Shown here: positions 57,647 to 58,880 of the stretch, piece after piece
Numbering within the stretch: the first letter of the stretch is position 1
How the letters are laid out: each line of letters starts with the position of its first letter
From: Ostrea edulis
Lineage: Eukaryota
Assembly: GCF_947568905.1 (NCBI RefSeq)
Contig: NC_079165.1
Coordinates: 41,478,001-41,542,000 of the forward strand
Length of the DNA stretch: 64,000 bases
Direction: 5' to 3'
Notes under the pieces: generated by a model
The model's database searches: none
What the model was told of the DNA's origin: nothing
Seen by the model: only the letters and a program-made list of their open reading frames with translations
Made by a program: the position numbers and the translations under genes

Positions 57647-58880
57647 ATTCATAGTATGTTTTTTAATCCAAGTAATTACTCTCTTTCAAAAATCTGTCTT
57701 GTCTTATTCAGTGTTTGGGGCATAAATATTCACCAAAGTTATCAACCTTATCATTGCATTTAAAATTAACTAGTATTTTCCTTCCATCTGTTGATCTGTT
57801 GTAATTAAGAAGTTCAATGTTACTATTCTTCCTTATTAAAATCGATACACCTCTACTGTATACGGATTCTGAATAGCAATGTATCATACCTCCAAACCAT
57901 CGTGAATTGTATCAAAATTCTTGTTTTTTTTTAACAAAATGTGTTTCTTGTAAAAATAAAACATTATAATTCACATCACTTAACCAGTCAAAAAGAATGG
58001 TACGTTTTTTTGTAGGTATTCAATCCTCAAACATTTAAGGAGTAATTTTTAAAGCTGCATTGTCCATGTATGTTTGTAGGAGTTGTCATTGTGTATTTAC
58101 TAACCAGGGTTGTCCTTGTTATTTTTCTTTCGTTGTTTCCGACGATCCGTCAGGAAGTCGTCAAGATTGGTCTGATTCTCGGTTGATGCACCTTTCTGGG
58201 GAACGGATGAACTTCCAAGCTTTCTGTTTTGTTTTGAGGAAAGTTTTTGATAGATCTTACCAAGTTTTTTTTTCCAGGCCACTTGCTGTGGTTAGTAAAT
58301 AATTTGGCTTCTGTATCCAGTCCAGTGCCCCAATGCATATCGAAGGTTCCCTCTTTGTGTTATTGCTTGAATTCTCCAACTTAACTTCAGCTATTTGATC
58401 AACTTTTTCTGTAACTATCTCCTCCATTACAGTCTCTTTGTCCTCACTATATCCAGGAGGATCAGTTACAGTATAGCCGATCCTCTAAGCATCAAAGGGT
58501 GTTTCCGCCTCCCTCACCATCTGTGCAGCACTGAGATCGCTAGAGCGAATGTTAGTTGGTAGGCATGTTCCGCTGATTTATGATGTTCTCCAAAAACGTA
58601 AAGATCGCAGGGGAAAAAGTTTGAAAGCGGATTTTCTTTGCCGTGAAATACCACCACATCATCGGGGGATTCCTCATAGTGTTGGCACTCTGGGAAACCA
58701 GGAGAATGGCCGGGCTCCTCACATACTCTGCATATCCTCACGTTTTTACATTGTTGTTTGTGATGTCCTTTTCCCCAGCAGTTGAGGCACTGCGCTTTCG
58801 GATTCCCTGCCACTTGGTTATGGTGATATATCCGACATTTTAAAAGCTGATCATTCTCAAAGTTCTGAAATATTCCCTAT
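57647..58880 (-). mobile_element. Decayed L1/Tx1-clade LINE: ORF1 (2x CCHC knuckle + NADAR domain) followed by ORF2 APE endonuclease, cut by the assembly gap
   Basis: ORF1: CRIYHHNQ..CLNCWGKGHHKQQC..CRVCEEPGHSPGFPEC, then NPLSNFFPC..SAEHAYQ..DMHWGTGL..WPGK.LGKI. ORF2 from ATG 58067: LNV*GLN..KRTILFDWL..FLQETHF..SRGVSILI..DGRKILV..LVNIYAPN, read across frameshifts. Confidence 0.88.

What the first reader, a model, noticed from the sequence alone, without database searches (positions are those of the whole stretch)
57647..58880. L1/Tx1 retrotransposon whose ORF1 carries a complete NADAR (ADP-ribose glycohydrolase-family) domain
Seen: on the minus strand a Tx1-like CRIYH motif and two CCHC knuckles (58789-58748 canonical; 58732-58685 CX2CX4HX6C) run directly into VVVFHGKENPLSNFFPC..SAEHAYQ. 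Reading across frameshifts then gives IRSSDLSAAQMVREAETPFDA*RIG..VMEEIVTEKVDQ..EGTFDMHWGTGL..WPGK.LGKI (about 58657-58240). A short basic tail and, about 30 bp later, the ORF2 APE endonuclease (LQETH, SRGVSIL, NIYAPN) follow. Established: these motifs define NADAR/YbiA (DUF1768). NADARs act as N-glycosidases, and in DarT1-NADAR toxin-antitoxin systems they remove ADP-ribose from guanine in DNA. Pierisin-family guanine DNA ADP-ribosyltransferases (CARP-1) are known from clams. Inference: the element family may carry its own de-ADP-ribosylase in the ribonucleoprotein, to counter host ADP-ribosylation of its cDNA/RNA or to process the TPRT target. That would be a host-transposon conflict module I do not recall being characterised. 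This copy is dead (stops and frameshifts) but keeps the conserved Glu of EHAYQ and the Asp of DxxWG.
Basis: partly seen in the sequence, partly recalled or inferred. Interest (0 to 1): 0.88.

Follow-up and report, generated by a model that had tools for sequence, protein, structure and literature searches.

The report
Dead LINE copy with NADAR-bearing ORF1
The window holds a broken fragment of a mollusc jumping gene (an L1/Tx1-like LINE) whose RNA-binding protein carries a NADAR domain, an enzyme type known to strip ADP-ribose from DNA bases. The fusion is real, widespread and under selection, but a 2025 paper already noted it in oyster elements and its function is untested.

Summary
Window 58843-57647 (minus strand) is a 1.2-kb internal fragment of an L1-superfamily LINE. 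It reads, in order: the end of an RRM, two CCHC knuckles, a decayed NADAR domain, a basic tail, the ORF1 stop, and 32 nt later the ORF2 ATG and the first part of the APE endonuclease.

The window pieces alone fail Pfam NADAR. Four 80-89% identical paralogues pass it or match it (three at 56-58 bits, cut-off 35.1; L002 at 28.2 bits is below). A family profile places the three window pieces in order along the domain.

NADAR-ORF1 is not a one-off capture:
- The genome has at least 151 matches in several families, all sampled ones with the same RRM-knuckle-NADAR layout followed by APE-RT.
- One family has 17 copies at least 99% identical. It includes a full-length element with a target-site duplication, a poly(A) tail and intact ORF1 and ORF2.
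- Homologues occur in Pinctada and Saccostrea.
- The catalytic residues (P. nicotianae E43, K50, E125, D130, W133) are conserved across 120 sequences.
- An AF2 model (pLDDT 89.6) matches NADAR structures 8BAU and 2B3W.

The novelty is limited. Genome Biol 2025 (PMC12477816) already notes NADAR in the ORF1 of C. gigas Tx1 LINEs. This scan also flagged the same thing on two other pieces of this genome.

The counter-defence function is plausible but untested. I found no DarT or PF03496 ART in the host genome.

The parts
57647..58843 (-). Whole retained fragment of the LINE copy, from mid-ORF1 to early ORF2. It is 5'-cut at 58843 and ends at the N run 57498-57646.
   Evidence: 87.8% nt identity to paralogue L002 over 1235 columns. 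No other piece of the element lies elsewhere in the window.
58823..58843 (-). End of the second RRM-like domain, with the conserved C-x-I-x-H motif (CRIYH at 58837-58823).
   Evidence: The motif is conserved in the alignment of 86 ORF1 proteins. The RRM+knuckle profile gives E 2.7e-18.
58748..58789 (-). CCHC zinc knuckle 1 (CX2CX4HX4C).
   Evidence: The Cys and His columns are invariant or nearly so in alignment A2. zf-CCHC scores 17-19 bits in paralogues, below the 20.8 cut-off.
58685..58732 (-). Zinc knuckle 2 (CX2CX4HX6C).
58553..58657 (-). NADAR piece 1 (model positions 1-41). It includes the E43-equivalent Glu of SAEHAYQ and is followed by a 7-bp deletion that removes the K50-equivalent codon.
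58485..58550 (-). NADAR helix segment read in another frame. It ends in TAG (58487-58485) at the K75-equivalent codon, which is AAG in the paralogues.
58383..58484 (-). NADAR piece 2 (model positions 62-106).
   Evidence: A 6-bp deletion lies near 58384.
58267..58356 (-). NADAR piece 3 (model positions 110-146). It has the strand Glu, the D-x-x-W-G motif and WPGK. It is preceded by a 7-bp deletion near 58355 and ends at a 1-bp deletion at 58268.
58100..58267 (-). Basic, poorly conserved C-terminal tail of ORF1, with the ORF1 stop TAG at 58102-58100.
   Evidence: The tail has low pLDDT and 0.22 mean pairwise identity in the family.
57647..58067 (-). Start of ORF2 (ATG at 58067), about 135 codons of the APE endonuclease. 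It is broken by stops and indels.
   Evidence: tblastn with intact ORF2 residues 18-114 gives 42% identity, E 3e-20. Indels are listed.

Best explanation
The window holds an old, dead, truncated copy of an L1-superfamily (Tx1-like) non-LTR retrotransposon of a bivalve.

In this group of elements ORF1p is a 'type I' RNA-binding protein: two RRMs and two zinc knuckles. A YbiA-type NADAR domain and a basic disordered tail are fused in frame to its C-terminus. ORF2 (APE-RT-zinc finger) starts a few dozen to about 180 nt downstream.

Shown here:
- The fusion is ancestral to many families.
- It is kept intact in young, multi-copy elements.
- It evolves under purifying selection with the ADP-ribose-binding and catalytic residues preserved.

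Inferred: ORF1p coats the element's RNA and travels with it to the target-primed reverse transcription site. The NADAR domain therefore most likely acts in cis on the element's own nucleic acids (RNA template, nascent cDNA or nicked target). There it would hydrolyse N-glycosidically linked ADP-ribose from guanine or cytosine bases. That would erase an inhibitory ADP-ribosyl mark laid down by a host or microbial ADP-ribosyltransferase, much as phage NADARs neutralise DarT1.

I put about 0.95 on the identity and anatomy, and about 0.35 on the de-ADP-ribosylation counter-defence mechanism. The confidence value given for this explanation (0.45) is for the whole statement, mechanism included.
For: Anatomy:
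- Window strings.
- Paralogues hit PF08719 at 56-58 bits.
- Intact ORF1 scores 74-82 bits.
- TIGR02464 scores 77.5 bits, above its cut-off.
- PDB sequence hits: 8BAU E 1.5e-8, YbiA E 1e-6.
- AF2 model pLDDT 89.6 and pTM 0.76. Foldseek finds 8BAU (TM 0.72) and 2B3W (0.71) for the C-terminal half, and tandem-RRM proteins for the N-terminal half.

LINE identity:
- ORF2 has Exo_endo_phos, RVT_1 and zf-RVT, and is collinear with human L1 ORF2p.
- The full-length copy L061 has a 15-bp target-site duplication and a poly(A) tail.

Family-wide presence:
- At least 151 genomic matches out of 393 candidates, many in open frames of 412-513 aa.
- Every family sampled has RRM-knuckle-NADAR followed by APE-RT.
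- 17 copies are at least 99% identical.
- The same two-ORF layout is found on unrelated metagenome contigs.
- Named homologues come from Pinctada and Saccostrea, and the matching ESM Atlas clusters are Mollusca.

Selection:
- E43 is conserved in 111/115 sequences, K50 in 109/113, K75 in 101, the strand Glu in 97/107 and W133 in 106/108.
- NADAR is as conserved as the RRMs (0.40 vs 0.41-0.45 mean identity), while the tail is at 0.22.
- Synonymous sites are saturated (pS about 0.8) while NADAR pN is 0.24-0.28.

Mechanistic precedent:
- YbiA-type and eukaryotic NADARs hydrolyse guanine- and cytosine-linked ADP-ribose on DNA or RNA (PMC11543638, PMC11125620, PMC12945103).
- Phage NADARs counter DarT1 (PMC11825919).
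- NADAR recurs in other retroelement proteins: PHD-esterase ORF1s and a Gypsy-like polyprotein, and Ectocarpus Gypsy Pol (PMC12477816).
Against: - There is no biochemical data for any retroelement NADAR.
- No cognate transferase was found in the host genome. DarT (PF14487) and PF03496 gave no match, and the controls did not ring either, so the negatives are weak.
- The only ART-family hits are two secreted HopU1-like ARTCs of unknown target.
- CARP-1 is known from venerid clams, not from oysters, and I could not search for it.
- By sequence the domain scores best against the riboflavin-intermediate N-glycosidase model.
- An animal multi-NADAR protein (C. elegans SNA-3) is linked to trans-splicing (PMC11125620), so an RNA-processing role is possible.
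- Some ADP-ribose contacts differ from 8BAU: Y84 to Ser, and R79 is variable.
- Expression is not shown. No run on record as RNA holds the element.
- The Tx1 clade assignment rests on the literature and on architecture, not on an RT tree.
Confidence: 0.45

Rival explanations
1. The NADAR domain is catalytically active but serves the element's own RNA or DNA processing rather than defence evasion. It could remove an ADP-ribose- or NAD-derived adduct formed during RNA maturation, translation or target-primed reverse transcription, or act in a trans-splicing-like RNA pathway.
For: Catalytic residues are conserved. The 2025 paper that first noted the fusion proposed RNA-intermediate processing (PMC12477816). 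[quoted passage not shown] No host base-ART was found.
Against: The demonstrated NADAR chemistry is N-glycosidic cleavage of base-linked ADP-ribose or riboflavin intermediates. No endogenous step of LINE replication is known to create such a bond. Most LINEs, including other type I ORF1 elements, manage without NADAR.
Confidence: 0.25
2. The domain is kept as a non-catalytic nucleic-acid or ADP-ribose/NAD-binding module. It would act as a chaperone, packaging or localisation domain, not as an enzyme.
For: It packs against the RRM/knuckle part in a high-pTM model. Several ADP-ribose contact residues of 8BAU are variable: R79, Y84 and R93.
Against: The residues whose mutation abolishes hydrolysis in bacterial NADARs (E43, K50 and the strand Glu equivalents), plus D130 and W133, are conserved in about 90% or more of 120 sequences spanning 27-73% identity. 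Binding alone would not need the two glutamates.
Confidence: 0.1
3. The domain works on a small-molecule substrate, as a riboflavin-intermediate or other nucleotide N-glycosidase like E. coli YbiA. It would give a metabolic rather than a nucleic-acid function.
For: TIGR02464 'riboflavin biosynthesis intermediates N-glycosidase' is the best NCBIfam hit and scores above its cut-off.
Against: It is fused to RRMs and zinc knuckles inside a retrotransposon RNP protein. Animals do not synthesise riboflavin (own knowledge). YbiA-type enzymes also act on ADP-ribosylated bases (PMC11125620, PMC12945103).
Confidence: 0.05
4. The NADAR-like stretch in the window is a chance resemblance, or a captured host exon or nested insertion peculiar to this copy.
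For: Pfam gives no significant NADAR hit on the window pieces alone.
Against: Paralogues and many other families carry the same in-frame domain with strong HMM, PDB and fold support.
Confidence: 0.01

Closest known systems
[quoted passage not shown]
   Same: Same kind of element in the same animal group (oysters). Both are L1/Tx1-type LINEs with a YbiA-type NADAR in ORF1.
   Different: That paper gives one sentence and a supplementary alignment, with no anatomy, copy census, residue analysis or structure. I could not compare sequences directly, so identity of the families is not shown. This genome is a different assembly, and its best public ORF1 match is only 73% identical.
Ectocarpus Gypsy LTR retrotransposons with NADAR at the N-terminus of Pol (PMC12477816); a Gypsy-like polyprotein with NADAR was also found here (P0204)
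   Same: A retroelement-encoded YbiA-type NADAR.
   Different: A different retroelement class, a different host kingdom and a different position in the protein. It is probably an independent capture.
Phage NADAR / gp30.3 orphan antitoxins that neutralise DarT1 (PMC11825919), and DarT1-NADAR toxin-antitoxin systems (PMC11543638)
   Same: A mobile genetic element carries a NADAR hydrolase. In phages it removes guanine ADP-ribosylation placed on the element's DNA by host defence, which is the proposed working analogy.
   Different: The LINE domain has the YbiA-type Glu, not the Asp of DarT1-linked NADARs or the His of phage NADARs (His appears in only 7 of about 107 ORF1s). No DarT was found in the host genome. 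It is fused to an RNA-binding protein rather than standing alone.
P. nicotianae NADAR (PDB 8BAU) and E. coli YbiA (PDB 2B3W)
   Same: Same fold (TM 0.72 and 0.71). The E43, K50, K75, E125, D130 and W133 equivalents are shared.
   Different: 24-27% identity. The loop between the strand Glu and the D-x-x-W motif is one residue shorter. There is a longer insert before the WPGKN motif. Y84 is replaced by Ser.
Accessory enzymatic or reader domains in LINE ORF1 proteins: type I RRM+CCHC ORF1p, and esterase/PHD ORF1p of CR1-like LINEs (own knowledge: Khazina and Weichenrieder 2009)
   Same: A type I ORF1p core (RRM + CCHC) with a modular add-on domain. Public data also hold PHD-esterase-NADAR ORF1s.
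   Different: NADAR is not among the classical ORF1p domain types.
Macrodomains of positive-strand RNA viruses (own knowledge)
   Same: A genetic parasite encodes an ADP-ribosyl hydrolase thought to undo host ADP-ribosylation.
   Different: An unrelated fold. Macrodomains mainly reverse protein-linked (PARP) ADP-ribosylation.

Membership tests
NADAR superfamily (Pfam PF08719), YbiA subfamily | Significant match to the NADAR profile | tested here: met
   Window pieces alone give no hit. Paralogues at 80-89% nt identity score 56-58 bits against a cut-off of 35.1, though L002 scores only 28.2 bits. Intact relatives score 74-82 bits. A family profile hits the window pieces at E 7e-17 to 6e-07.
NADAR superfamily (Pfam PF08719), YbiA subfamily | YbiA fold (helical core flanked by small sheets) | tested here: met
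   The AF2 model of the intact relative has pLDDT 89.6. Foldseek top hits are 8BAU (TM 0.72) and 2B3W (TM 0.71). The window copy itself was not folded because it is broken.
NADAR superfamily (Pfam PF08719), YbiA subfamily | Catalytic and ADP-ribose-binding residues: E43, K50, Glu in the last strand (YbiA type), D130 and W133 (P. nicotianae numbering) | tested here: met
   Conserved in the family. In the window copy the E43, strand-Glu, Asp and Trp codons survive, the K50 codon is deleted and the K75 codon is TAG.
NADAR superfamily (Pfam PF08719), YbiA subfamily | Hydrolysis of base-linked ADP-ribose or another N-glycosidic substrate | not testable with these tools
   This needs a biochemical assay.
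L1 superfamily LINE (L1/Tx1 group) | ORF2 with N-terminal APE endonuclease, RT and C-terminal zinc-binding domain, collinear with L1 ORF2p | tested here: met
   L061 ORF2 has Exo_endo_phos, RVT_1 and zf-RVT. It aligns to human L1 ORF2p at E 1e-78 over residues 5-877, against 4e-11 for R2. The window keeps only about 135 APE codons.
L1 superfamily LINE (L1/Tx1 group) | Hallmarks of target-primed reverse transcription: poly(A) tail and target-site duplication | tested here: met
   L061 has a 15-bp duplication flanking the element and an A-run at the 3' end. This cannot be tested on the truncated window copy.
L1 superfamily LINE (L1/Tx1 group) | Type I ORF1p: RRM(s) plus CCHC knuckle(s) | tested here: met
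   Tandem-RRM fold hits. The Cys and His columns are invariant.
Tx1 clade specifically | RT phylogeny groups the element with Tx1L and related elements | not tested
The assignment rests on PMC12477816 and on architecture.
DarTG1-type toxin-antitoxin or anti-DarT counter-defence | A cognate DarT1 transferase encoded alongside or in the host | tested here: not met
   PF14487 gives no match in the genome, but the controls also did not ring, so the negative is weak. No ART ORF lies in the element.
DarTG1-type toxin-antitoxin or anti-DarT counter-defence | BC4488-type catalytic Asp (or phage-type His) in the last strand | tested here: not met
   Glu in 97 of 107, His in 7 and Asp in 1.

The most novel reading that the evidence does not exclude
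NADAR may be a recurrent retroelement accessory enzyme in marine invertebrates and algae. It is found in type I LINE ORF1p, PHD-esterase LINE ORF1p and Gypsy-like polyproteins. Under this reading it erases base-linked ADP-ribose from retroelement RNA or cDNA. That would point to an undiscovered eukaryotic defence that marks retroelement nucleic acids by guanine or cytosine ADP-ribosylation. It would be the eukaryotic counterpart of DarT against phage NADAR.
Probability: 0.25. Interest if true: 0.85.

Novelty: new member of a known kind. Interest (0 to 1): 0.58.

Why it matters
Nucleic-acid ADP-ribosylation and its reversal by NADARs have so far been worked out only in bacteria and phages. What animal NADARs do is an open question that the field itself states (PMC11125620).

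Here a catalytically intact NADAR is kept under selection inside the RNA-binding protein of many young LINE families. It is also independently present in other retroelement classes. That makes these elements a natural, experimentally tractable place to look for base ADP-ribosylation of RNA or DNA in animals, and for a new layer of host-transposon conflict.

The window copy itself is dead and has no functional importance.

Tried and rejected
- Pfam on the window pieces alone gave no NADAR hit. I rescued the test with paralogues and a family profile.
- The single-copy capture or chance reading is rejected.
- Host transferase search: PF03496 and DarT PF14487 gave nothing, with silent controls. 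PF01129 gave two secreted HopU1-like ARTCs that are not pierisin-like by PDB sequence search.
- I could not run a CARP-1/pierisin query because no such sequence or profile was obtainable. The PNAS 2006 paper is not held.
- dN/dS: synonymous sites are saturated between families, and copies within the young family are 99-100% identical. Only pN/pS bounds and residue conservation are usable.
- A NADAR domain tree of 178 sequences was poorly resolved (69 of 175 branches open) and confounded by fragments. I draw no conclusion from it on single versus multiple capture.
- ORF2 homologue names were uninformative for clade assignment.
- Expression: no run on record as RNA holds the element, so I did not use read laying.
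- P0001 DNA is not on record.
- A search of this genome with a PHD-esterase-NADAR ORF1 matched only through its NADAR part. That architecture was not seen among the hits here.
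Full report
**What is in the window.**

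The features, in order:
- a C-R-I-Y-H motif (58837-58823);
- a canonical CCHC knuckle (58789-58748);
- a CX2CX4HX6C knuckle (58732-58685);
- NADAR-like sequence in three different frames (58657-58553, 58550-58383 with a TAG at 58487-58485, and 58356-58267);
- a basic tail ending at a TAG (58102-58100);
- 32 nt later an ATG (58067) that opens an APE endonuclease fragment (LQETHF, SRGVSIL, NIYAPN).

The copy ends at the N run 57498-57646, which I left untouched. Upstream, homology to other copies stops at 58843. There an unrelated short repeat begins that has at least 35 genomic copies. No other piece of the element lies elsewhere in the window.

**Is the window stretch really NADAR?**

Scanned piece by piece, the window copy gives no significant Pfam NADAR hit. 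The genome holds about seven paralogous copies, 80-89% identical in DNA. Their longer open frames hit PF08719 at 56-58 bits against a cut-off of 35.1; one, L002, scores only 28.2 bits.

Aligned with those copies, the window copy has these lesions:
- a 7-bp deletion that removes the K50-equivalent codon;
- a point change turning the K75-equivalent AAG into TAG;
- 6-, 7- and 1-bp deletions further on;
- several indels in ORF2.

A profile built from ORF1-NADAR homologues hits the three window pieces collinearly, at model positions 1-41, 62-106 and 110-146 of 153, with E 7e-17 to 6e-07. The window domain is a ruin, not 'complete'. No intact member of this particular family was seen. Its copies differ by about 12%, and one (L003) has an internal inversion.

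**Is the fusion family-wide?**

A six-frame search of the whole genome with a paralogue's NADAR frame returned at least 151 matches out of 393 candidates. Many lie in uninterrupted frames of 412-513 aa at 33-64% identity. Every family I could sample has the same order: RRM-like region, knuckles, NADAR, then an APE-RT ORF2.

One family is very young:
- 17 copies are at least 99% identical over the NADAR-coding DNA, and their ORF1 sequences are 99.3-100% identical.
- Locus L061 holds a full-length element with a 15-bp target-site duplication, a poly(A) tail, a 449-aa ORF1 (NADAR 74 bits) and a 1251-aa ORF2 with Exo_endo_phos, RVT_1 and zf-RVT.
- That ORF2 is collinear with human L1 ORF2p (E 1e-78). 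R2 proteins score far lower.

This places the element in the L1 superfamily.

**Beyond this genome.**

A database search with the intact ORF1 found 114 homologues, almost all 380-480 aa and annotated PF08719. The named ones come from Pinctada imbricata and Saccostrea cucullata. The matching ESM Atlas clusters are eukaryotic, Mollusca. On unrelated metagenome contigs, NADAR-ORF1s at 28-41% identity are again followed by APE-RT ORF2s.

An exhaustive search with the NADAR domain alone gave 5296 hits at E up to 1e-3. Among the best representatives:
- 32 of 138 have the same RRM-knuckle N-terminus.
- Seven of 71 scanned carry a GDSL esterase, with a PHD finger as well in the two checked individually, which is a different LINE ORF1 type. 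One of these, P0112, sits upstream of an APE-RT ORF2.
- One (P0204) is a Gypsy-like RT-RNaseH-integrase polyprotein with an N-terminal NADAR.
- An abalone host protein has seven NADAR domains.

**Structure and active site.**

I folded the intact ORF1 with an 86-sequence alignment. The model has pLDDT 89.6 and pTM 0.76, and only the basic tail is disordered. Foldseek finds P. nicotianae NADAR with ADP-ribose (8BAU, TM 0.72) and E. coli YbiA (2B3W, TM 0.71) for the C-terminal half. It finds tandem-RRM proteins (UP1, U2AF65, Sxl) for the N-terminal half.

I mapped the residues that Schuller et al. (PMC11543638) showed to bind ADP-ribose or to be needed for hydrolysis, using the HMMER alignment to 8BAU. 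Conservation across 120 ORF1 sequences:

| Residue (P. nicotianae) | Conservation |
|---|---|
| E43 | 111/115 |
| K50 | 109/113 |
| K75 | 101 |
| Strand Glu that defines the YbiA subfamily | 97/107 (His in 7) |
| D130 | 80, plus 11 Asn |
| W133 | 106/108 |

R79, Y84 and R93 are variable.

NADAR is as conserved as the RRMs and knuckles (mean pairwise identity 0.40 against 0.41-0.45). The tail is at 0.22. Between families, synonymous sites are saturated (pS about 0.8) while NADAR pN is 0.24-0.28 and tail pN is 0.43-0.55. Together these results argue for a selected, catalytically competent domain.

**What it probably does.**

Shown by others:
- YbiA-type and eukaryotic NADARs hydrolyse ADP-ribose linked to guanine N2 in DNA (PMC11543638, PMC11125620).
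- They also hydrolyse ADP-ribose linked to cytidine, with ScARP modifying both DNA and RNA (PMC12945103).
- Phages carry orphan NADARs that neutralise the DarT1 defence (PMC11825919).

Inferred here: ORF1p coats the LINE RNA and accompanies it to the integration site. A NADAR fused to it is therefore positioned to clean base-linked ADP-ribose off the template RNA, the cDNA or the target DNA. The recurrence of NADAR in three retroelement architectures fits a general benefit to retroelements.

Against this reading:
- I found no cognate transferase. DarT and PF03496 profiles gave nothing, though their controls were silent too.
- The only ART-family genes found are two secreted HopU1-like ARTCs.
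- CARP-1 is documented in venerid clams (PMC11209040), and I could not search for it.
- The best NCBIfam match is the riboflavin-intermediate N-glycosidase model.
- An RNA-processing role was the suggestion of the only prior paper.
- Expression could not be shown.

**Comparison with what is known, and novelty.**

A full-text search found one prior description. The Ectocarpus transposon paper (Genome Biol 2025, PMC12477816) reports NADAR in a Gypsy lineage. [quoted passage not shown]

The kind is therefore already on record, and the window holds a dead new member of it. This scan also flagged the same feature on two other pieces of this genome. Those notes are not independent evidence.

- the anatomy (RRM-RRM-knuckle-knuckle-NADAR-tail);
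- the census and the youth of some families;
- active-site conservation;
- the structural model;
- the wider set of retroelement architectures that carry NADAR.

The element is not a member of DarTG1-type systems. It has no DarT and has the YbiA-type Glu, so it may only work like the phage counter-defence.

**Limits.**

- I built no consensus and no repaired reading of the element. All inferences about intact proteins use naturally open frames from other loci.
The closest named homologues and the neighbouring TLR-like and C1q genes point to a bivalve.

Noticed in passing
L067 (P0112) and L073 (P0161), public metagenome contigs: LINE ORF1 proteins that combine a PHD finger, a GDSL/SGNH esterase and NADAR, in two different domain orders. 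P0112 is followed by an APE-RT ORF2. NADAR therefore also occurs in esterase-type LINE ORF1s.
   Followed up: partly
L072:1854-8780 (P0204): A Gypsy-like polyprotein (RT, RNase H, integrase) with a NADAR domain at residues 368-510, 37% identical to the LINE NADAR. The host is unknown (a Logan contig).
   Followed up: partly
P0116 (Haliotis rufescens XP_048255699, 4240 aa): A giant abalone host protein with seven NADAR domains. Several other representatives have 2-8 NADAR repeats.
   Followed up: no
L068:1165-2121 (+) and L069:1477-2325 (-), same genome: Two intronless ORFs with signal-peptide-like N-termini and R / S-x-S / E-x-E ARTC motifs. The best PDB sequence match is the Pseudomonas effector HopU1, which ADP-ribosylates RRM proteins. 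Their targets are unknown.
   Followed up: partly
L061:1372-7090 (G000 C3): A full-length, apparently intact member of a young NADAR-LINE family, with a 15-bp target-site duplication, a poly(A) tail and intact ORF1 and ORF2. There are 17 genomic copies at least 99% identical over the NADAR-coding part.
   Followed up: yes
alignment of 120 ORF1 proteins: Seven ORF1 NADARs have His instead of the YbiA-type Glu in the last strand. His is the residue typical of phage NADARs.
   Followed up: no
window 58836-58900: A short repeat abutting the 5' end of the LINE fragment. It has at least 35 copies at 89-97% identity across the genome. Its identity is unknown.
   Followed up: no
window 51486-52850 (+): An open frame with LRR repeats, a transmembrane-like stretch and a TIR domain: a Toll-like-receptor-type gene or exon.
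   Followed up: partly
window 60111-60542 (+): An open frame encoding a C1q domain (66 bits).
   Followed up: partly
window 55909-57412 (-): A series of open frames just beyond the N run that look like another mobile element but have no Pfam hit. They are unrelated to the LINE.
   Followed up: no
L003 (G000 C4:68827993-68831547): This copy of the window's LINE family has an internal inversion. ORF1 up to the D-x-x-W-G motif lies on one strand, and the rest of ORF1 plus ORF2 on the other.
   Followed up: no
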